DNA from: Setoptus koraiensis
Lineage: Eukaryota > Animalia > Arthropoda
Assembly: GCA_048013815.1 (NCBI GenBank)
Contig: CM106586.1
Span: 12,586,001-12,650,000, forward strand
Length of the DNA: 64,000 nucleotides
Reading direction: 5' to 3'
Below are positions 37,419 through 59,537 of this stretch, one piece after another (position 1 is the first letter of the stretch; each line of letters begins with the position of its first letter). The notes under the pieces were generated by a model, which was given only the letters and a program-made list of their open reading frames with translations, searched no databases and was not told where the DNA came from. The position numbers were made by a program, and so were the translations under genes.

Positions 37419-38642
37419 AACATGCATTCATATCAGCTCGATAATAGATCAAGAATGGATTTTTTCCCATCCATTGTCTATTCAAAGATGCGCTGTCTAT
37501 CTGTCTCTCTTTGTCGGTTTGCCCTCTCCTAATTAGTCTCCATTATTATTATTAGTCTCTATTATTATTATAAATAGTGCCTAGTACAATGACAGGAGAT
37601 CACAATCAATGATACCATCAATAACTGTGAGTGTCTGTTACATTTTAAGTATCAAGTGCCATCCGTTACCATCAACATGGCACATAGCGGCAGTGTTCAT
37701 GGTAACGGAAATCAAACAAGTGAAATTATCTTATTAGTCTAGCTGACTCTTTGTTTGCTTGCTTATGTACATAAATCAGCAGCAACCATATATCAAGCAA
37801 ATGCATTGCTCCATTGATATATATACAGGTTGATACACACATGTTCATGTAGCTAATAAAAGTTATCCCCCTGGAAAAAAAAATTACGTGCCAATCATTC
37901 TGCATGGCCAAATGACTTTTCGTTTCAGATAAGTTCAGACTATGATTTAGTTTTGTTAGTTTGCCAACGCGCACCGTGTCTCACACATCATCTGACACAT
38001 CTTGATCAAGTCAAAGATCTAATCGACATCTCATTTCGTGGCTTTAGACTAACAAGTGGCTTATCGAGGCTCTGTGATTTCGCAATTTCGCACTTTCACA
38101 CATTCGTATTTAAGCACTTTAGCAAATGAATCTCATCGCATCGTTTCTGAGTCGATCATTAAGAGCATTCGGAACAATCAAGATTGAACTCTTTTGTTTG
38201 AACAGCAATCTCTGACATCCAATTCGATCCATGCCACATTACCTCAGCTCATCCCCGAGCAAATTTTCGATGTCCTGCATAGGATATTCTTCTTTCTTTC
38301 ATTGTTCCCCTGATGATGGCAGATTAGTTGTGGACCAATAGAGTCCAAGATATGACGAATTGAGAAAACAATTTGAAGAATCGAAGAAAAATAATTGAAA
38401 AAAAAATCTCCTTTGAATTTGGCGCTCGAAGAAGGCGCAGGCGTAAACTTGACATGTTTTGTTTGTCATATGCTTTCAATGAGGTGATCGCGATTGGGTT
38501 AAGCTGGAGAAACAAAAAACAATATTCACCTCATCTCTATTTATTTCTACCTTGATTTCGATGTCCACTACATTTACACAACTATAATTGTCGTCTACGT
38601 CATCACTATTGGGATTGATACAGTTGAAACGCTAATCTAACC

Positions 38643-39923
38643 ATGGCTAGAATAAACGCAGTTGCCGAATCACTCAGGGGACTCAAAGAACTGAAGGTCA
38701 ACATACATTGTCTGGACAATCAATCGCCTGTGACACGTATAGCTATCTATGTTAAGGCCGGTTCTAGATATGAGCCAGCGGCAGTGCCAGGAATATCGCA
38801 TTATCTACGGGCAACAGCTAATTTAACAAACAAAAACTGTAGTATATTCGGTTTGACGCGAGCTCTACAAACTCATGGCGCATCCTTCAATGTGCTATCC
38901 GATAGGGAGCATATTATTTACAGGCTCGATTGCCTAAAAGACAAACTAGAGCCATCATTTAAGCTACTATCGGATGTAGTCAGTGCCCCCGAGTTTAGAT
39001 CGTGGGAATTAGTTGATAACACCGAGGATAATCTAAAGGTCGAATTGGAATATTTCAAAAAAGATCAAGCACGAGTGCTAAATGAAGCATTAAATAAAAC
39101 AGCATTTCGTGGTGGCCTAGCTCATTCTATGTATATTCCTGAGCATCAAATTAAAAAAATCAATAAGCACCATCTAAAACAATTTGTTTCGGACAATTAT
39201 GTACCCTCAAGAACTACAGTGGTTGGTCTGGGTGTCAAGGAGGACGATCTACGTTACACAATTCAAACCAACTCCCTACTTGAGTTTGAGAATACAAAAT
39301 ACAACGGTGTAAGTGGCGAATCAAGATACGTTGGTGGAGAGGCTCGATTGCAAGCTCCATTCGACAACACGATGGTCACTTTTGTAGGACAGGCACCAGG
39401 TCTCAATGACCCAGCCGGAGTAGCCAACTTGAAATTATTTCAAGCTATTCTAGGTGGATTTGGTGCAGGAATCAAGTACAGCCCTGGCTCTGAGCGCAGT
39501 CTTGCGGCTGCTGTTGCTCAATATAATAATCAAGTTAAAACATCCATAGTTAATATTACCTACTCTGATGTAGGACTGTTTGGTTTTACATTACATGGAC
39601 CAAACGGCGCTCTCGCTGATGCATTAAAAGTTGCCCTGAATCATTTTGAGAAAGCAGCCAAATCAATCACAGACGAAAATCTAGCAATGGGTAAACATGT
39701 ACTCCGAGTAAGATCAAAGATTGAAAGTGAAAATCATGACTGTGTCTTCGCCAGTATGGGAAGTCTAGCAGCAAATGGTATAAAGACTGACTTGACAGAT
39801 GTAGAGAAAGTCACAGCAGCCGATATTAAGGATTCTGTATCAAAGCTTGCTAGAAGTAAATCAACATTAGTGTCAGTTGGAAATCCACGTTACATACCTT
39901 ACTTAGATGAACTGGAAAAATAA
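38643..39923 (+). CDS. UQCRC2: Cytochrome b-c1 complex subunit 2 (core protein 2, M16 family), intronless
   Basis: IAIYVKAGSRYE, GISHYLR (inactive HxxEH variant), APEFRSWE, YSDVGLFGF, C-terminal VGNPRYIPYLDEL. Confidence 0.93.
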   Translation: MARINAVAESLRGLKELKVNIHCLDNQSPVTRIAIYVKAGSRYEPAAVPGISHYLRATANLTNKNCSIFGLTRALQTHGASFNVLSDREHIIYRLDCLKDKLEPSFKLLSDVVSAPEFRSWELVDNTEDNLKVELEYFKKDQARVLNEALNKTAFRGGLAHSMYIPEHQIKKINKHHLKQFVSDNYVPSRTTVVGLGVKEDDLRYTIQTNSLLEFENTKYNGVSGESRYVGGEARLQAPFDNTMVTFVGQAPGLNDPAGVANLKLFQAILGGFGAGIKYSPGSERSLAAAVAQYNNQVKTSIVNITYSDVGLFGFTLHGPNGALADALKVALNHFEKAAKSITDENLAMGKHVLRVRSKIESENHDCVFASMGSLAANGIKTDLTDVEKVTAADIKDSVSKLARSKSTLVSVGNPRYIPYLDELEK

Positions 39924-49849: not shown

Positions 49850-51877
49850 ATGGACCATCAGACATTAGATGAATTAATGTCCATGATAAGATCTTTTAGG
49901 GTTCATGATTTGCAGGCTCTCCTGAGCTACGCTGGCAAGAATAGGTCTGGCAAAAAACAAGAGCTAAAGGATAGGGCTTTAGATTTATTAAGACAAAGGT
50001 CTATACCAATACATTTACAAGAAAAAATTCGTGAATTACACCTTAGCAAACCATACCCTGTAACGACTTTTTCGGGTAACTCTAATAGTATAAATATCGA
50101 ACCAGAGACTATGAGACAAATAGATATGATGGCACACGATAACCATAGGAGTAATAGTTCATCTGCTAATTCGATTCGAGCTAGTAGTAGCCTTCTCAAT
50201 ACAAACATGTGCATAATGGAGGATAGACCTGACCCAAGCATTTTCAATTTGAATATTTCAGCATTACCAGATTATATGCGCCCACATTTGGAACCCCCTT
50301 CTTACTTCCATACACCAGGAACTACAGGCCTTAATCCCACGGGACCAAACCCAGTTTATCAAACCGCTGCACACTCAGCTCGAAGATCTAATTCTATTGC
50401 GAATCAGCATAGTAGAATAATGCATCACCAACCTCATCATATACCATCACGACCAATACCCAACTATCAAAATCATTATATGAACCACAACCAACCTCAC
50501 ACAAACAACCACCTCCCACAACAGCAAGTAAACCATTTAAACTCATATAGTGTTAATCATGCACATCAGCAGCCTAACGTACATCCTCCAACACCTCTTT
50601 ATGGAACAGCCACACTCCTAACTGAACCCTCAAACGCTAAATTTAAGGGTTTACCTTTCTTTCCTATCATTGAGGAAATAGTACATCCATCCTGCCTCCT
50701 CCCATCGAGTCGTCAGATGAATAGGCCAAATGAATCAACAATTTCTTTCAACTTGACCTCAGCACAAGCAGACAAAATTGCAATGTCAGCTCTATCATCA
50801 AACCCGAAACAATTCGGTCGTCAAATATTGCTGAGGTTCTGTAATTGTGATACACAATTCGAACAAGACGATAATTTCCCTCCAGATTTGCTTGTCGAAG
50901 TCAATCGTAAGCTGGTTGAGCTTCCACCTGCCTTGCACAATCCAAATAAACCAGACAAACAAATTAGAAGGCCTGGAAAACACGTGGATATCACTTCAGT
51001 GTGCAAGCTATGCCCGCACGTTAAAAATCATATAATGATCAAATGGTCAGCAGATCTTCAGAAACCACAGAGAACATACGCTATAACTGTTGTTTTAGTT
51101 AGAAAACTTAATTCCAGTGACCTACTCCAAGATGTAGTGTCAAGAGGATTAAGTGATCAAGAATTGACAAGATCAATGGTTAAAGAAACCCTAACCGCTG
51201 ATGCAGATAGTGAAATTGCCACTACTGTCCTGAGAGGTACTCTTATATGTCCATTAGGAAAGATGAGGATGCGTACGCCATGTAGATCCAGCAAATGTCA
51301 TCACATTCAATGTTTCGACGCGCTGTTGTATCTACAGATGAACGAAAGAAAACCCTCCTGGATCTGTCCCGTCTGTGATCAACCAGCATTGTTCAAGGAT
51401 CTCATAATTGATGGTCTATTCACAGATATACTTAAAGAAACAACGACAACGACGACGGAGGTTCAATTCCACGAAAACGGTTCTTGGAGTGTTGTGCCGA
51501 AGAATGAGGACGGCTACTCTAGAGATATTAAACCTAATACAAATAAGCGTCAATGCCTAGAGTCATCTGGAGTTGCCTCCGGGAGTAACGGTAAATTCGA
51601 GTGTCAAACCAGAAAACCTGAGATAGAAGTAGTCGTCATTAGCGATAGCGAAGACGACGATGATAGGAACGAAGAGAAGGAATCAGATGAAACATCTCAA
51701 GCTTCGGGATCTGTCTATTCCATTTATAGTTCACCAGAGACCGACATACCAAAGACGCCAGAACTACCGGAGCTATCACCTCGAACGGTGGATGCGAATA
51801 TTTATGACAGTCACCCCGTTACGTCCTCTGTTTTCGTTGGAAATTTTGGCTCTGGAGCAAATGAACCTCCAAGATAA
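49850..51877 (+). CDS. PIAS: E3 SUMO ligase PIAS / Su(var)2-10 (SAP-PINIT-SP-RING-SIM), intronless
   Basis: SAP (FRVHDLQALLSYAGKNRSGKKQEL), PINIT region, SP-RING (CPLGKMRM..PCR...CHHIQCFDA...W.CPVC), SIM (EVVVISDSEDDD). Confidence 0.97.
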   Translation: MDHQTLDELMSMIRSFRVHDLQALLSYAGKNRSGKKQELKDRALDLLRQRSIPIHLQEKIRELHLSKPYPVTTFSGNSNSINIEPETMRQIDMMAHDNHRSNSSSANSIRASSSLLNTNMCIMEDRPDPSIFNLNISALPDYMRPHLEPPSYFHTPGTTGLNPTGPNPVYQTAAHSARRSNSIANQHSRIMHHQPHHIPSRPIPNYQNHYMNHNQPHTNNHLPQQQVNHLNSYSVNHAHQQPNVHPPTPLYGTATLLTEPSNAKFKGLPFFPIIEEIVHPSCLLPSSRQMNRPNESTISFNLTSAQADKIAMSALSSNPKQFGRQILLRFCNCDTQFEQDDNFPPDLLVEVNRKLVELPPALHNPNKPDKQIRRPGKHVDITSVCKLCPHVKNHIMIKWSADLQKPQRTYAITVVLVRKLNSSDLLQDVVSRGLSDQELTRSMVKETLTADADSEIATTVLRGTLICPLGKMRMRTPCRSSKCHHIQCFDALLYLQMNERKPSWICPVCDQPALFKDLIIDGLFTDILKETTTTTTEVQFHENGSWSVVPKNEDGYSRDIKPNTNKRQCLESSGVASGSNGKFECQTRKPEIEVVVISDSEDDDDRNEEKESDETSQASGSVYSIYSSPETDIPKTPELPELSPRTVDANIYDSHPVTSSVFVGNFGSGANEPPR

Positions 51878-53182: not shown

Positions 53183-56149
53183 TTATGTCCTTAAAATATA
53201 AAAAAACAATTCCATAACAAGATTCATAGTGCCACCTAGAGATGAAATAACAGGAAGTATCGTTGCATCCAAATCGTGGATGTAAGATAATGGCAATGGA
53301 CATCCTTTAGATCCTACATCGAATCCAATCTGCATAGAGAATGATTTAGGTTTTATGCGTGTGTGGTGGTTAGTGTCTCTAATATAACTATGAATTTCCG
53401 TCGGAGAATAATGTTACTTACCTCATCAATTGACTCATTTAGAATCAGGCGTAATGCTAGTACATCTCTACCCTCTTCAATTAGTCTATCAAGATGCTTG
53501 GTCATCGCAAAACAAAAAGATTGCGCCACTTCCTCGGCAAGATGGCTGATATCTATCTCACTAAGATCCTGTTCATTTTTGCTTAAAAAGACATCAGTCC
53601 ATCTGATTGAGTAACGTTCCCCTACATAATCAGCGCTATTCTGAACTTTTATGTTCTTATCATGTTCCAAAGGTCGATTATCTATTGGACTTTTTACTCT
53701 GCATAATAGAAAGAAACCGAAAAGTCTGGTAAATAATCGCGTGGGAAAAGTAGAATCATGTAGTCACTGATTATATTAAGGCTTACCCAAATGGATCAGA
53801 GGGTAGATCTTCGTTGGCTACCCAAATAACTGACACTCTTTTTAACAAATCCGGTTTATCTGGACCGACTACAAGAATCAACGATGGGGGAGAGTAAAAG
53901 CGGATCGTTAGTGATATTGAACAAAATCTCATGTGTTGTTGATGATCCTAGTCGAACAGCACGCACTTACCTCCCGTTTCTATGCTAAACTCGCTCATAG
54001 TTTGTAAAGAACCTCTTAATGCTGTCAAGGTGTGAGATTGAATTTGTATCAGTAAACCATCCTCAACAACACTTATCTTTGCTACTTGACCAGGCTGAGT
54101 TGCTTTCAGAGCACCACTAAATATTACAAAACTCGCTCCTATCTGTCCGTGACATTTACTTATGTCACATAATTCATATTTGTTATTATATACTTGAGTA
54201 TCATGCTGACCATCATCATTTTGAACTGAAACAAGATGACTAGTTGCCTCGGTGCATATGTCTGACATCCATGATAAAACGTGTTCGTTATTAGAGTTAG
54301 ATAACACTTTCATGACTTGTTGGTAGTGGTCCATAGGAAACTTTATGACCACTTTTTCTTGATCTATATCAACTAGAATTCTCATCTTGGGAACCGATTC
54401 AACTGAATATCGGTAGTTGCGTAAATCTGCTAAAATTCCAATTATAGTATGTCCTACTTCATAGTAAACTGGTGGTCGATCGCGCAAACTGGCTATCATG
54501 AATGGATATGAGTAATGTTCGATACCCAATCTTAACAGTAATCTCAAGGGGAAAACTTTCAGCCATGGTACCTCCCACTTTTGAACAAGTATTGCCACCA
54601 AGAAAGGCATCTTTGGAATAGTGAGATTCCCAAAACAGTGTCTATTTACCGGGCGCGTGAAGAGTACACCGGCAACATTTTTATTCCCAAAGAGGCCATC
54701 TGTAAACAAAAGATTCCCGAGATTTCCGAATGATTGTCCTCGCAATGATAATTCATGGATTGTTAAGTATAGTTTGAAAACATCCCTCGGCAAAGATCTT
54801 TCGTTTGTAGGCTTATCAAGTACAAAAACTACTTCTCTACGACCTAAAAGAGCTAAACCCTCTGATCTAAAGTACCAGAATTCTCGACAGACATCAGTCG
54901 GTGAGTTAATCATTTTTTGTATTAGCGTAATATTAGTATTTTGGGTTTCAGTGTTAGAGGTAGAAGATCCATCCTCACAAGTGGTTATCTGTGAGATATT
55001 CTGTCTCTGATTATTCTTCCTCATGCACCAGCTCTCGTCTATGATTTTGACATATATGTAAAAGTTTTTCAATAGAATGAACTTAACAGTATTTTCTTCA
55101 TTTCCAGTCTTACTGGCGAGCTCGACGAAACTACTCACACGGTTATCTTGTGTATGAGTTTCAGGATGAAGATTTGATTTGTCACTGCTAGATTCGGTCG
55201 ACATAACTAGATCAGGTGCCAAATCTTGACCAAACACTGAGCTGAAAGACGAATTTTCCTGTGTGCTAAGCTTAGGTTGTTGATCATCAGTTGGCTTTTG
55301 CTCCATTACAATGGGAGGAAGAAATCCTAATTCATCGCTCAATGTGACATGTTTAATTTCATGCAATGAAGACTTTGATTCTGTATTGTGTTTACTACTT
55401 TTTTTTCTTCTAGATCTAGATCCTAGTTTGACAAAGTGCCTATTCCTTCTCTCTACTCCGGCAATCCCGGACGTTAACGGAGGCATGGAGCATGAAGACT
55501 CACAGAGATCCGTTCCTGGTCGAATGCCATCGGAAAAAATGACTTGTTTATTCACTGTTTGCTGTTGACCTGAAGTATTGCCTACCACATTGTGAGATTT
55601 ATCCCGTGAGGATGAACTAGTCCTCAAGACACCTTGCACATGTGCGTTCTGATTGCTGTTTCCAACTAAGTTTATTTCTGGCGAGGTTGCTTCATAATTT
55701 GTAGAGGTAGATTGTTGCGGCTGAACTGATTGCCTCGGATACTCTTGTGTCGGAGCTGTTGATGAATCATTTGTTTCCAATCGATCAACACCGTCTTGAA
55801 TGTGATTGCTATAGGTACGTTCGTTCTCATTTTGTCTCAATATAGAATTACTGGACATAAATGATTCTGTTGGCCTCGTCAATGTTATAGCTAGTAAGCG
55901 GATACAACTATCACAGACTCTCGCTTCCTTGTTGTTTAGGTAGGGTAATCTTGCTTTCAAATGACAACAGTCAGAACAAAATATCTTCCCACATGATCGA
56001 CAATGATGTCTTCTTCTCAATAATGTAAATTCGACGCTGCATAGTTGACAAGATGAAACATCGTTATCAGGTATCCAAGTCGGTGGATGAGTTCCTGGAA
56101 CTCTTACTGGGCTATCCACTTCTTGATCGTCGTGATCCATATTTAACAC
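53183..56149 (-). CDS. ZFYVE9: SARA/endofin (ZFYVE9/16): FYVE + PP1-binding motif + DUF3480; exons 56149-53971, 53868-53787, 53698-53422, 53329-53183
   Basis: FYVE WIPD...RRRHHCRSCG...RVC; KQVIFSDGIRP; IRWTDVF; C-terminal VMELFFYIL; three GT-AG introns, all in phase. Confidence 0.93.
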
Positions 56150-57262
56150 CGTTAGCCTGAACGTGATAATAATTTAGTTAGCTCAAAAATAAATCATTAA
56201 ATCCATTCGGTTGAATAAAAATGGCAATAATCCTCAGTTGTAGTATCTGATCCAGTCGGTACCTTCAGTAATATCTCCACGAGAGCAGGATTTGATAACA
56301 ATAACTATTACAGAAAGAGCAGCCTCAACAAAGTGAACATATTTGCTTTGAGATATTTCATCATTTTAAGGATAGAACATTGTCTTTGACTCTTGTTATG
56401 ATTTCCATCTACTATCGTGTATAACAGTACAATAATATCAACAACTTTCGTAAGCGCCGATCAAACCGTCGGATGATATGAGAATATGATTTAAATGTAT
56501 AAATCCAGTTCAACATCTATGTACGTAGTATATATGTGTTCTTGAATAGTACAGACATAACGGGAACGAATTCTCAAAACAAAAAGGTAGCCTAGCCTCC
56601 AGACTTTGGAGTTTTTTACGCATACGAATACCATGATGGCGGGCTATTCGAACGCTCTTGAATTGGAAATGTTGTGGAGCGAAGGCTCGCTCCGAGAGAG
56701 ATGAAAATTATCAGATTATATCATCTCCTCTTAATATCTTAAACTAGAATCAATAATTAATCGTTTGTTTTCATTGATTGATCTAATCTGACAAGTTTCA
56801 TTGAATTTTGGGTAAAACTCCGAGCGAAAAAATATCGATCCACAACACGATAAATTAGATTGCGACTATTATGCGAGTATCAGTTACTTGTGGAGCGTGT
56901 TTGCATAATTCAAAGTTCATTTAAAGTTCATGCATAATCGATTTAACAGCTCATGATGACAATTCAAATGCTCAATAAACAAATTTTCTTATCGATTATG
57001 AGTGTTCTCATGACTCGTTTTTGTGAGCCTGGAATAGTCTCCTTCTCAACTCTCACTTTAACCAACGTTCACATTCGATGTTACATCGTATCACTGATTT
57101 TTAAACTGTGTTTATAATAATGATTTGTAAACGGGCAGATCAATCAACGTCTATTAGCCGATTGTTACTTGAATACATCTTTAGCTTAAAGTCTTTCACT
57201 AAAAGATCTCTCAGAGATCGATCGAAACAGGAAATAAAATTAATTAAATTTACCATCTAACC

Positions 57263-57757
57263 ATGGACATGTGGAGTATAAGTCCAAGAGAACTGACAAA
57301 ATCAATGGTCATGGAAAAACTTTCCACTGGCGCCAATAGTGAAATTGCCACCACTGTCTTAAGGATCACCCTTATATGTCCAATAGGAAAGATGAGGATA
57401 CGTTCGCCATGTAGATCTAGCAAATGCAATCACATTCAATGTTTTGACGCGATGTTGTATATACAAATGAACGAGAAAAGACCCTCTTGGATATGTCCTG
57501 TCTGTAATAAGCCTGCATTGCGCGAAGATCTCATAATTGATAGTTTATTCACAGATATACTCAAGAAGACACCAACAACAACGACGCAAGTAGAATTCCA
57601 TGAGAATGGGTCTTGGACTACTGTCTCAGAGGATCGGTATCACTTTGCAGACATTCAACTCAACTCGAACACACTCCAAATGGGGTCCTATGTGACTTCG
57701 CACGGGAGCAAGAAGCAGATAGAGATCATTGTTATCAGCGATAGCGAGGATGATTAG
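57263..57757 (+). CDS. Mini-PIAS paralogue (164 aa): SP-RING + acidic SIM only
   Basis: About 85/112 aa identical (hand count) to PIAS over the segment starting at 51161; all Zn ligands kept; many synonymous changes; stop immediately after the SIM. Confidence 0.85.
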   Translation: MDMWSISPRELTKSMVMEKLSTGANSEIATTVLRITLICPIGKMRIRSPCRSSKCNHIQCFDAMLYIQMNEKRPSWICPVCNKPALREDLIIDSLFTDILKKTPTTTTQVEFHENGSWTTVSEDRYHFADIQLNSNTLQMGSYVTSHGSKKQIEIIVISDSEDD

Positions 57758-58457
57758 TACAATGAGGATTTGGACAAATCAGACTTTTGAAGGACCTTTG
57801 CCTGGATTTTAACCCCATTGAGTGATGATATCAATCGATTATGATGAAATGTAATGTCTGTTTCAATCATTCGAAGTCGATTACCTGTAGAAATTCAAAT
57901 TCGAACGCTTATTGAAATGCATATTATCCATATTATCAACTCCCTTTGTTATAGTTCGACACATGATAAAAGTTATTCCATTTAAAGCGCGGGTATTTTA
58001 GTTCCGGTCCGAGTGATCAGTTGATGATGATGCGGGCATTTCCAGGTGCGCATTGTGTTTGCCGGCACCACCAACCAGTGGTACCAAAACTAAAAACAAC
58101 TGGCGACAACGGCGTTCCAACGAAGATGCGCGTGTATGTTCATGCAACAGATTCATCCATACGCACGCACGCACACGCACGCACACAAACCAACTGTCCA
58201 TGATCGCCACATTCACTTTCGGTTGCGATGATTTTCAACGGTTTCGGCTCGTTATCAACAGGAACCAATTTTTTGGTTGGCCTCCGAAAGCGACATTATT
58301 CCAGTATAAATTATCCATATAAAACAGCAAAAATATCATTGATCCGCTTTGCTTGAGTTGAAAATCTTCCACCATCTACATAATAAAGACATCATATACA
58401 TTGGAGACACTAACCTAAATTCATTACAGCACAAATTTTCCTCAAAATACAGCAATT

Positions 58458-59537
58458 ATGGGTTGTTCAATGAGCTCGTCGGCCGAACGTGCTGCCCAAA
58501 TTAGATCAAAAAAAATTGATCATGATCTACGCAGAGAGAATGCGCGTAAGGCGGGCGAAGTTAAACTGCTATTGCTGGGAGCTGGAGAATCTGGAAAATC
58601 TACCATAGTTAAGCAAATCAAGATTATACACGAGTCATGCTTCACCGAAGATGAATGCATGCAACACAAATCAATAGTACATAACAATGCTATCCAAAGT
58701 TTGAAGGCCATACTAACTGGCATGAACAAGCTACACATCGACCTGGATGATGAAGCCAAACTTGAAGATGTTGAATTTTTTGTGCGGTGCTATCTGGATG
58801 CCCAGAGAGACTTGAGGTCTATGCCAGAGCTAACACCAGAACTGGCTAAAGTAATGAAAAATATTTGGGAAGACAGGGGAGTTCAGTTGTCGTTGCGACG
58901 GTCCAACGAATACCAACTAAATGACTCGGCAGAATACTTTCTCAATGCATTGTCACGTATATCTCATCCTGCCTATATACCCACTCAACAGGATGTATTG
59001 AGAACACGAGTTAAAACCACTGGTATAATCGAAACTAAATTTAGATACAGGGGACTGTTATTCAGATTATTTGATGTTGGTGGACAACGAAGCGAGAGGA
59101 GCAAATGGATACATTGTTTCGATGGTGTTACAGCCATTATATTTTGTGTAGCATTATCTGGATATGATCTGACATTATACGAAGATGAAAAAGTCAATAG
59201 AATACAAGAGAGCATGAAATTATTCGAATCCATATGCAACAATAAGCTGTTTACAGATACCACAATAATACTATTCTTAAACAAAAAAGACTTATTCAAA
59301 CAAAAAATTTGTCGATCATCACTTAAACTAGCCTTCCCAGAATACAATGGTAATAACACTTATGAGGAAGCTGCTGCTTACATAAGATATAGATTCGAAT
59401 CGCTGAATAAGAATAGAGACAAGAAGATCTTCACGCATCTCACATGTGCTACCAACCAACAAAACATGGAACTGGTCTTCGAAGCCGTCACTAATGACAT
59501 TCTGAAACGTAACCTCAATGGTCATAATCTCTACTAA
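58458..59537 (+). CDS. Heterotrimeric G protein alpha subunit, Gi/Go family, divergent and intronless
   Basis: [39 protein letters not shown]; closest to Go ([12 protein letters not shown]-terminal Tyr). Confidence 0.93.

What the first reader, a model, noticed from the sequence alone, without database searches (positions are those of the whole stretch)
57263..57757. Selected-for 'mini-PIAS': SP-RING + SIM only SUMO E3 paralogue 5.4 kb from its parent
Seen: this intact ATG-to-stop ORF is a copy of only the catalytic SP-RING and acidic SIM of the neighbouring PIAS, about 76% identical by hand count. All Cys/His ligands are kept, and substitutions pile up at third positions (CAC GAA AAC GGT vs CAT GAG AAT GGG, both HENG; ATC TGT CCC vs ATA TGT CCT). 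It stops right after the SIM, and its start context CTAACCATGG matches that of UQCRC2. Known: PIAS SAP and PINIT domains target DNA and substrates, SP-RING recruits Ubc9, the SIM binds SUMO, and Drosophila Su(var)2-10 acts in piRNA-guided silencing. Inference: a functional, untargeted or adaptor-recruited SUMO ligase, or a dominant-negative regulator of PIAS.
Basis: partly seen in the sequence, partly recalled or inferred. Interest (0 to 1): 0.78.

Follow-up and report, generated by a model that had tools for sequence, protein, structure and literature searches.

The report
Stand-alone PIAS catalytic-core mini-gene
A gall-mite genome carries, 5.4 kb from its normal PIAS SUMO-ligase gene, an intact 164-codon copy of only the ligase's catalytic core and SUMO-binding tail; a related mite has the start of the same copy at the same spot and it evolves under purifying selection, so it is probably a working truncated gene, although nobody has yet shown that it is expressed.

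Summary
The ORF at 57263-57757 (+) encodes 164 aa that match residues 433-603 of the intronless 675-aa PIAS gene at 49850-51877. Identity is 63% at protein level and 81% at DNA level over the 329-nt core. It covers the whole E2~SUMO-activating module: both halves of the SP-CTD, the SP-RING and the C-terminal SIM. It has no SAP, no PINIT and no C-terminal tail, and homology stops at the ORF borders.

The genome is an eriophyoid mite. A related mite (FYVE neighbour 90% identical, dS 0.58) carries the first 82 codons of the same mini-gene, up to a contig end, at the same place and in the same orientation. Along the path between the two mini copies omega is 0.18. Omega = 1 is rejected at p = 2e-6 and omega = 0.5 at p = 0.004. 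The window's mini-protein still evolves about 18 times faster than its parent.

The model folds like PIAS2, PIAS3 and Siz1, with a disordered tail ending in the SIM.

No RNA data exist, so expression and transcript structure are untested. No free-standing relative turned up elsewhere.

Verdict: probably a lineage-restricted, selectively kept truncated PIAS paralogue, a new variant of a known kind. Whether it is an active ligase or an inhibitor is open. Interest is moderate.

The parts
57263..57757 (+). Mini-PIAS ORF, 164 aa plus stop
   Evidence: the only ORF of 60 aa or more here on either strand; coding log-odds positive only in this frame
57284..57325 (+). N-terminal helix (aa 8-21), the part of the SP-CTD that precedes the SP-RING
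   Evidence: AlphaFold2 model, helix 8-21; aligns to PIAS2 4fo9 and PIAS3 4mvt; SP-CTD described as flanking the SP-RING on both sides in PMC8064691
57341..57364 (+). Strand E27-R34 (EIATTVLR), equivalent to the SIM-like strand of Siz1 that holds the donor SUMO
   Evidence: aligned to Siz1 GLTTTSTI; role of that strand from PMC12751080 and PMC8064691
57365..57514 (+). SP-RING / zf-MIZ (aa 35-84) with all Cys/His kept
   Evidence: Pfam PF02891, 3.4e-21, profile positions 1-50 of 50; invariant columns kept
57515..57622 (+). C-terminal SP-CTD part (aa 85-120)
   Evidence: pLDDT 90-96, helix 94-102 and strands 109-113 and 118-120; Foldseek hits 4mvt, 5jne, 4fo9, 3i2d over 116-130 columns
57623..57718 (+). 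Disordered, fast-evolving linker (aa 121-152); differs from the parent by in-frame indels
   Evidence: pLDDT 48-66; no DNA similarity to the parent; gaps in multiples of three
57719..57754 (+). SIM with acidic/Ser tail (IEIIVISDSEDD), last residues before the stop
   Evidence: aligned with the parent's IEVVVISDSEDD and the family SIM column; 37-nt DNA match at 75.7%
51146..51658 (+). Source segment in the parent PIAS gene (aa 433-603)
49850..51877 (+). Parent PIAS gene, a single ORF of 675 aa (SAP, PINIT, SP-RING, SIM, tail)
57205..57219 (.). 15-nt palindrome GATCTCTCAGAGATC, 44-58 nt upstream of the ATG; kept in the related species apart from the central base; candidate promoter or 5' UTR element
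   Evidence: unique in the window; function not tested

Best explanation
The ORF is a lineage-restricted, free-standing protein-coding gene. It arose by a local DNA-level partial duplication of the intronless PIAS gene before this mite and a related species split. It has been kept under purifying selection that is relaxed relative to the parent. It encodes exactly the E2~SUMO-activating module of a Siz/PIAS ligase: the N- and C-terminal SP-CTD elements, the SP-RING, then a disordered linker and a SIM. It lacks the SAP and PINIT domains that aim PIAS at DNA and at particular substrates. The most likely mechanism is inferred, not shown. The SP-RING/SP-CTD binds and activates Ubc9~SUMO. The only remaining targeting device, the SIM, brings the module to SUMO itself, either SUMO on already modified proteins or SUMO on the back of Ubc9. 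The protein would then act as a small, substrate-unspecific, SUMO-guided ligase or chain extender. My layered odds: real selected gene about 0.65; given that, active minimal ligase about 0.6 and inhibitor about 0.4.
For: The architecture is shown by Pfam, by matches to PIAS2, PIAS3, Siz1 and Siz2 structures, by the AlphaFold2 model (mean pLDDT 80, residues 8-120 ordered) and by Foldseek (4mvt E = 4.5e-13, rmsd 2.1 A over 116 columns; 5jne; 4fo9). All 13 invariant and 21 of 25 nearly invariant family columns are kept.

The orthologue is locus L001. Its FYVE neighbour is 90% identical in protein with dS 0.58. It holds an 82-codon ORF, cut by the contig end, with its own ATG and an upstream in-frame stop, at the same position and orientation.

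The tree is (Fragariocoptes PIAS, (parent, (mini window, mini L001))), with 97/80 support for the mini pair.

For selection on the mini-only path, NG86 gives omega 0.18 with Fisher p = 2e-7. ML GY94 gives omega 0.176, with LRT against omega = 1 at p = 2.2e-6 and against 0.5 at p = 0.004.

The intact frame is itself unlikely under neutrality. Only 0.5-3% of simulated neutral copies at the observed divergence stay stop-free. The SIM is still in frame after several indels.

Homology ends at the ORF borders on both sides. No conversion tract was detected. The one variant seen in a second isolate is synonymous, 57481 A>G. Base composition and frame-specific codon score look like coding sequence.

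Stand-alone ORFs are the rule in this group: 84% of Aculops lycopersici genes are intronless (PMC7738191).

The roles of the parts come from the literature. SP-RING plus SP-CTD activate E2~SUMO. PINIT and SAP select substrates and DNA. The SIM after the SP-CTD may bind SUMO on the back of the E2 or promote chains (PMC8064691; PMC8591536).
Against: There is no expression evidence. No RNA run holds the stretch, and the three holders are contig sets that look like DNA.

The orthologue is known for only 72 comparable codons. Its C-terminal half and SIM are unseen, and the parent gene of that species is unknown, so old gene conversion from a constrained parent cannot be fully excluded. The window's mini is slightly closer in DNA to its own parent than to the orthologue (76% versus 71%; dS 0.79 versus 1.28).

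Only one amino-acid change is shared by the two mini copies.

The window's copy evolves fast, with 18 changes against 7 in L001 and 1 in the parent over 72 codons. It has lost the ancestral start and has replaced four nearly invariant residues, one of them shared with the parent: S36T (also in the parent), L41I, K73R and G94S.

If the neighbour's dS is used as the neutral yardstick, omega rises to about 0.4.

Earlier notes of this scan report many partial duplicates in this genome that were judged relics.

A Siz2 fragment without SAP is inactive on its natural substrate (PMC8591536). A core without targeting domains may therefore do little by itself.
Confidence: 0.5

Rival explanations
1. It is a selected gene whose product inhibits rather than catalyses. 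The protein binds Ubc9 and SUMO through its SP-RING and SIM but delivers SUMO nowhere useful. It therefore competes with full-length PIAS, acting as a dominant-negative regulator or Ubc9/SUMO sink.
For: It shares the evidence for selection and architecture with the main explanation. It lacks every targeting domain. SAP-less Siz2 is inactive on RPA (PMC8591536). Fast protein evolution with replaced near-invariant residues (G94S, L41I, K73R) would fit loss of full catalytic competence with binding retained.
Against: The residues that define the catalytic fold, including the Trp of the W-x-C-P-x-C motif and all zinc ligands, are all kept. A pure binder would not need all of them. Nothing in the sequence distinguishes an inhibitor from a ligase.
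Confidence: 0.2
2. It is a non-functional relic. A partial duplicate happens to keep an open frame, and the low omega is inherited from past gene conversion by the constrained parent or from a recent loss of function.
For: There is no expression evidence. This genome holds many partial duplicates that other agents judged relics. Protein evolution is strongly accelerated and the ancestral start codon is lost in the window. The mini is closer in DNA to its own parent than to the orthologue. The stem shared by the two minis is very short.
Against: Omega on the mini-to-mini path is 0.18; omega = 1 and omega = 0.5 are both rejected. dS to the parent is about 0.8, so any conversion is old, and no tract was detected. 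Stop-free survival is expected in only 0.5-3% of neutral copies, before counting frameshifts. The SIM is kept in frame beyond an indel-rich linker. A new ATG replaced the lost one, so the folded domain is still preceded by a start codon. The flanks have lost all similarity while the ORF has not.
Confidence: 0.2
3. It is not a gene of its own but an exon: either an alternative 3' exon spliced to the SAP-PINIT part of the parent PIAS, or the end of another transcript with short upstream exons.
For: No RNA data exclude it. AG dinucleotides lie just inside the 5' end of the ORF. Introns with canonical GTAAGT...AG do occur nearby, at the 3' end of the FYVE gene.
Against: No SAP or PINIT similarity lies anywhere between the parent and the ORF. 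The 1.1-kb upstream spacer has no + strand ORF of 60 aa or more. Splicing from the parent would need a roughly 6-kb intron spanning other ORFs on the opposite strand, including the FYVE/SARA gene, in a group where the median intron is 170 bp and 84% of genes are intronless (PMC7738191). Introns seen in this window are about 70-100 nt. Both species have an ATG preceded by an in-frame stop at the 5' limit of homology.
Confidence: 0.07

Closest known systems
Siz/PIAS SUMO E3 ligases (PIAS1-4, Su(var)2-10, Siz1/Siz2)
   Same: It derives from a PIAS gene by descent and nests inside the eriophyoid PIAS clade. It has the same SP-RING, the same SP-CTD on both sides, and the same SIM position and acidic/Ser tail. 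The predicted fold superposes on PIAS3, PIAS2 and Siz1.
   Different: It has no SAP, no PINIT and no Ser/Thr-rich C-terminal tail. It is 164 aa against 675 aa. Its protein sequence evolves roughly 18 times faster than the parent's.
NSE2/MMS21 (the SP-RING subunit of Smc5/6)
   Same: It is a small protein whose only catalytic element is an SP-RING. The structural match is weak but real (3htk, 7p47, E about 3e-3 to 6e-3).
   Different: zf-Nse scores 25.9 bits, below the 27-bit cut-off. It has no N-terminal helical Smc5-binding domain. It is clearly derived from PIAS, not from NSE2.
Plant PIAL1/PIAL2 (SUMO chain-extending 'E4' ligases)
   Same: It works-like candidate: a reduced PIAS-type protein in which SIMs drive SUMO chain extension (PMC8064691).
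   Different: PIALs keep a PINIT domain that binds MOM1, are much larger and arose independently in plants. No activity has been tested here.
Other partial gene duplicates of this mite genome noted by the scan (LOTUS-only TDRD5 copy, half SRPK, CPSF1/IFT80 patch)
   Same: It has the same mode of origin: a local partial DNA duplication that leaves a domain-sized ORF.
   Different: Those that were followed up were mostly judged relics or ordinary duplicates. This one has an orthologue in a second species and omega well below 1.

Membership tests
Siz/PIAS-type SUMO E3 ligase | SP-RING (zf-MIZ) with its Cys/His ligands and the W-x-C-P-x-C motif | tested here: met
   PF02891 at 75.2 bits (cut-off 33.5), full profile length; C39, C50, C55, H57, C60, W76, C78 and C81 kept
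Siz/PIAS-type SUMO E3 ligase | SP-CTD elements on both sides of the SP-RING, including the strand that holds the donor SUMO | tested here: met
   Model ordered over residues 8-120; Foldseek 4mvt, 5jne, 4fo9 and 3i2d over 116-130 columns; EIATTVLR aligned to the Siz1 strand. This is a prediction, not a solved structure.
Siz/PIAS-type SUMO E3 ligase | SIM downstream of the SP-CTD | tested here: met
   IEIIVISDSEDD aligns with the parent and family SIM column; SUMO binding not tested
Siz/PIAS-type SUMO E3 ligase | PINIT domain | tested here: not met
   No PF14324 hit in the mini, while the parent has one; no PINIT similarity upstream
Siz/PIAS-type SUMO E3 ligase | N-terminal SAP domain | tested here: not met
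   No PF02037 hit in the mini; tblastn of the parent finds nothing else in the window
Siz/PIAS-type SUMO E3 ligase | Ubc9 binding and stimulation of SUMO transfer | not testable with these tools
   Needs biochemistry
NSE2/MMS21 | zf-Nse type SP-RING above the family threshold, plus an N-terminal Smc5-binding helical domain | tested here: not met
   PF11789 at 25.9 bits against a cut-off of 27; only about 34 residues precede the RING; the tree places it inside PIAS
Expressed protein-coding gene | Transcript and/or peptide evidence | tested here: inconclusive
   The look-up of sequencing runs returned no RNA holder; the contigs laid are DNA-like and cannot show expression
Expressed protein-coding gene | Purifying selection on the copy itself across species | tested here: met
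   Omega 0.18 over 72 codons between the two mini orthologues; omega = 1 rejected at p = 2e-6 and omega = 0.5 at p = 0.004. Limited to the 5' 44% of the ORF.

The most novel reading that the evidence does not exclude
This would be the smallest natural free-standing Siz/PIAS-type module: 164 aa holding only the SP-CTD/SP-RING core and a SIM. It would have been made by domain miniaturisation in an extremely streamlined mite genome and kept by selection. It would act either as a SUMO-guided, substrate-unspecific ligase or chain extender, or as an evolved antagonist of the full-length PIAS.
Probability: 0.45. Interest if true: 0.6.

Novelty: new variant of a known kind. Interest (0 to 1): 0.45.

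Why it matters
Structural work has defined SP-RING plus SP-CTD as the E2~SUMO-activating unit, with PINIT and SAP as the aiming devices. That picture comes from engineered fragments. A natural gene that keeps exactly the activating unit plus a SIM, and is conserved between species, would be an evolutionary experiment on what such a core does alone in vivo: promiscuous or SUMO-directed ligation, chain building, or inhibition. It would also be a clean case of a new gene born from a domain-sized partial duplication in one of the smallest and most intron-poor animal genomes, where other such duplicates noted by this scan were judged relics. The practical weight is modest, because the gene is restricted to a narrow mite lineage and its expression is unproven.

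Tried and rejected
- Exact-product look-ups of the mini, the parent PIAS and SRP54 found nothing, so the genome's gene calls are not in the collection.
- The word search with the mini gave one hit, P0001, which is an exon fragment of an ordinary PIAS.
- The exhaustive search of 1.84 billion representatives gave 4,191 hits, none above 58% identity. The short hits I inspected are exon or contig fragments. L014 has a PINIT ORF directly upstream, and in L013 homology runs past the ATG into the PINIT end. P0242 is a read-through of four tandem full PIAS copies in another organism.
- I looked for the mini beside the FYVE gene in five other eriophyoid-like lineages and beside the Fragariocoptes PIAS. 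It is absent there, but synteny is reshuffled, so this does not show absence from those genomes.
- The cluster look-up of the 82-aa orthologue fragment found nothing in the collection.
- I tested for homology beyond the ORF, upstream against the parent's PINIT end and downstream against the parent's tail and 3' flank. Scores were within shuffles.
- The conversion-tract run test was not significant.
- Rfam on 56100-58500 gave only sub-threshold miRNA noise.
- A retrocopy origin is rejected. The copy is truncated at both ends relative to the parent and has no A-rich tail after the stop.
- RNA evidence is unavailable.

Full report
**What is there.** The window holds an ATG-to-TAG ORF at 57263-57757 on the + strand. 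It encodes 164 aa and is bounded upstream by an in-frame TAA at 57245-57247. Pfam finds a full-length zf-MIZ/SP-RING at aa 35-84 (E = 3.4e-21). The neighbouring single-ORF gene at 49850-51877 encodes a 675-aa PIAS with SAP, PINIT and zf-MIZ. The small protein aligns to parent residues 433-603 with 63% identity (E = 4e-67).

At DNA level the similarity is 80.9% over 57289-57617 against 51160-51488, with a second 37-nt match at the SIM. Nothing else in the window resembles PIAS. Local alignments of the upstream and downstream flanks against the parent's PINIT end and C-terminal tail score within shuffles. Similarity is therefore co-extensive with the ORF.

**Which organism.** The FYVE/SARA neighbour (53948-56149, - strand) has its best named relatives in the eriophyoid mites Aceria tosichella and Fragariocoptes setiger, at about 41% identity, plus many unnamed assemblies at 40-43%. 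Eriophyoid genomes are extremely compact. In Aculops lycopersici 84% of genes are intronless and the median intron is 170 bp (PMC7738191). That fits the intronless PIAS, SRP54 and G-alpha genes here. A stand-alone 164-codon ORF is therefore a normal gene shape in this group.

**An orthologue in a second species.** One assembly contig, L001 (run SRR33593474), encodes a FYVE protein 90% identical to the window's, with dS = 0.58 and omega = 0.076.
- Divergent from that gene, at the same distance and orientation as in the window, L001 carries an ORF that runs from an ATG to the contig end, 82 codons. An in-frame TAA lies seven codons upstream. The ORF is homologous to the mini-PIAS.
- Its N-terminus (…LQDVVARGLSNQELTRSMV…) still matches the parent back to about residue 426. 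In the window this stretch has diverged, lost two codons and lost the ancestral ATG, and a new ATG now lies further downstream.
- A maximum-likelihood tree of 34 SP-RING regions gives (Fragariocoptes PIAS, (parent, (mini window, mini L001))). Support for the mini pair is 97/80. Branch lengths are 0.04 for the parent, 0.6 for the window mini and 0.28 for the L001 mini.
- By parsimony over the 72 shared codons, amino-acid changes are 18 on the window mini, 7 on the L001 mini, 1 on their common stem and 1 on the parent.
- The duplication therefore predates the split of the two species, though not by much, and the copies evolve far faster than the parent.

**Selection.** The clean test uses the path between the two mini copies, which contains no parental branch.
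- Nei-Gojobori gives dN 0.235, dS 1.28 and omega 0.18. Raw counts are 34.5 of 171 non-synonymous sites against 27.5 of 45 synonymous sites, Fisher p = 2e-7.
- A pairwise GY94-type likelihood fit gives omega 0.176. Omega = 1 is rejected at p = 2.2e-6, 0.7 at 1.5e-4 and 0.5 at 0.004. Omega = 0.35 is not rejected (p = 0.06).
- Using the FYVE gene's dS as the neutral yardstick gives omega about 0.4.
- Mini against parent gives omega 0.17-0.27. Nearly all protein change is on the mini side, so this corresponds to roughly 0.35-0.5 on the mini branch.
- Constraint is thus real but clearly relaxed compared with the parent.

Independent smaller points agree.
- Only 0.5-3% of simulated neutral copies at 19-30% divergence stay free of stops, before counting frameshifts.
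- The SIM is still in frame behind a linker that differs by several indels.
- No conversion tract is detectable.
- The single difference in another isolate's contig is a synonymous A>G at 57481.
- Composition and codon score are coding-like in this frame only.

**What the protein looks like.** AlphaFold2 with a 34-row alignment gives mean pLDDT 80. Residues 8-120 are ordered, with a helix at 8-21, the RING, a helix at 94-102 and terminal strands. The tail from 121 is disordered.
- Foldseek matches PIAS3 (4mvt, E = 4.5e-13, rmsd 2.1 A over 116 columns), the Siz1 complex 5jne, PIAS2 4fo9, Siz2 6u75 and Siz1 3i2d. Nse2 and ubiquitin RINGs follow far behind.
- Sequence matches to the same PDB chains cover mini residues 10-126.
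- All 13 invariant columns of the family alignment and 21 of 25 nearly invariant ones are kept. The exceptions are S36T (shared with the parent), L41I, K73R and G94S.

According to the literature read here:
- the SP-CTD flanks the SP-RING on both sides and, with it, activates the E2~SUMO thioester;
- a strand before the RING holds the donor SUMO in a SIM-like way;
- PINIT recognises substrates such as PCNA, and SAP binds DNA;
- the SIM after the SP-CTD may contact SUMO on the back of the E2 or promote chains (PMC8064691; PMC12751080);
- a Siz2 fragment without SAP is folded but inactive on RPA (PMC8591536).

The mini-protein therefore keeps the complete activating module and the SIM, and lacks every aiming domain. 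From my own knowledge, not tested here: the Trp kept at position 76 and the Cys at 55 correspond to residues commonly mutated to make ligase-dead PIAS. The two serines after the SIM core fit CK2 sites, as in phospho-regulated PIAS SIMs.

**Distribution.** No free-standing relative was found.
- The length-limited word search returned only an exon fragment.
- The exhaustive search returned 4,191 SP-RING proteins, none above 58% identity. The short ones I checked are exon or contig fragments of normal PIAS genes.
- No MIZ sequence lies next to the FYVE gene in five other eriophyoid-like lineages, nor within 10 kb of the Fragariocoptes PIAS. Gene order there is reshuffled, so this is weak evidence of absence.

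**Origin.** The copy is truncated at both ends relative to the parent and has no A-rich tail. It sits 5.4 kb away, with other genes between. This points to a local DNA-level partial duplication, not a retrocopy. Earlier notes of this scan describe many such partial duplicates in this genome, several judged relics on follow-up. That sets a cautious prior, which the cross-species result overcomes only in part.

**What remains open.** No RNA run holds the stretch. The three holders are contig sets with continuous cover of genes and spacers alike, so they are DNA-like and say nothing about expression. The orthologue is known for 44% of the ORF only, and its parent is unknown. Alternative splicing from the PIAS gene cannot be excluded without RNA. 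It would need a roughly 6-kb intron across other ORFs on the opposite strand, including the FYVE/SARA gene, in a group with short, rare introns. Whether the protein is an active minimal ligase, a chain extender or a competitor of PIAS is inference.

**Verdict.** My odds are about 0.65 for a selectively maintained gene, split roughly 0.6/0.4 between active ligase and inhibitor. A relic gets about 0.2 and an exon of a larger transcript about 0.07. It is a new variant of a known kind, of moderate interest.

Noticed in passing
window 53353-53670 (-) and 53948-53970: The FYVE/SARA ORF ends a few codons after a canonical G|GTAAGT donor (about 53967-53972). The conserved 105-aa ORF downstream is 95% identical in L001, where its product hits SARA_C. 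It looks like the terminal exon of that gene after two short introns, not a separate mini-gene.
   Followed up: partly
window 57205-57219: A perfect 15-nt palindrome, GATCTCTCAGAGATC, lies 44-58 nt upstream of the mini-PIAS ATG. It is unique in the window and kept in the related species except for the central base. It is a possible promoter or 5' UTR element.
   Followed up: partly
window about 56590-56665 (core 56615-56629): A strongly conserved block lies in the FYVE/mini-PIAS divergent spacer between the two species (…TTTTTACGCATACGAAT…GGCGGGCTATT.GAACGCT). It has no Rfam match. It may be a shared bidirectional promoter element.
   Followed up: no
window 56754-56794: About 40 nt here match several other high-depth contigs of the same runs, with loose ends on both sides. 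This points to a short dispersed repeat in the spacer.
   Followed up: no
protein P0242 (from the representative library): A 1,519-aa predicted protein from another, unidentified organism contains four consecutive full PIAS-like units (PINIT plus SP-RING). It is probably a read-through of a tandem PIAS gene array.
   Followed up: no
window 38637-38646 and 57257-57266: An identical 10-mer, CTAACCATGG, lies at the start codons of the UQCRC2-like ORF and the mini-PIAS. It probably reflects a preferred start context. The mini's ATG is not the ancestral one.
   Followed up: partly
L002/L003 12868-13314 (-): In a more distant eriophyoid-like lineage, FYVE and G-alpha are also neighbours but in tandem orientation. 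A 148-aa ORF without any Pfam match lies between them, and there is no MIZ sequence.
   Followed up: no
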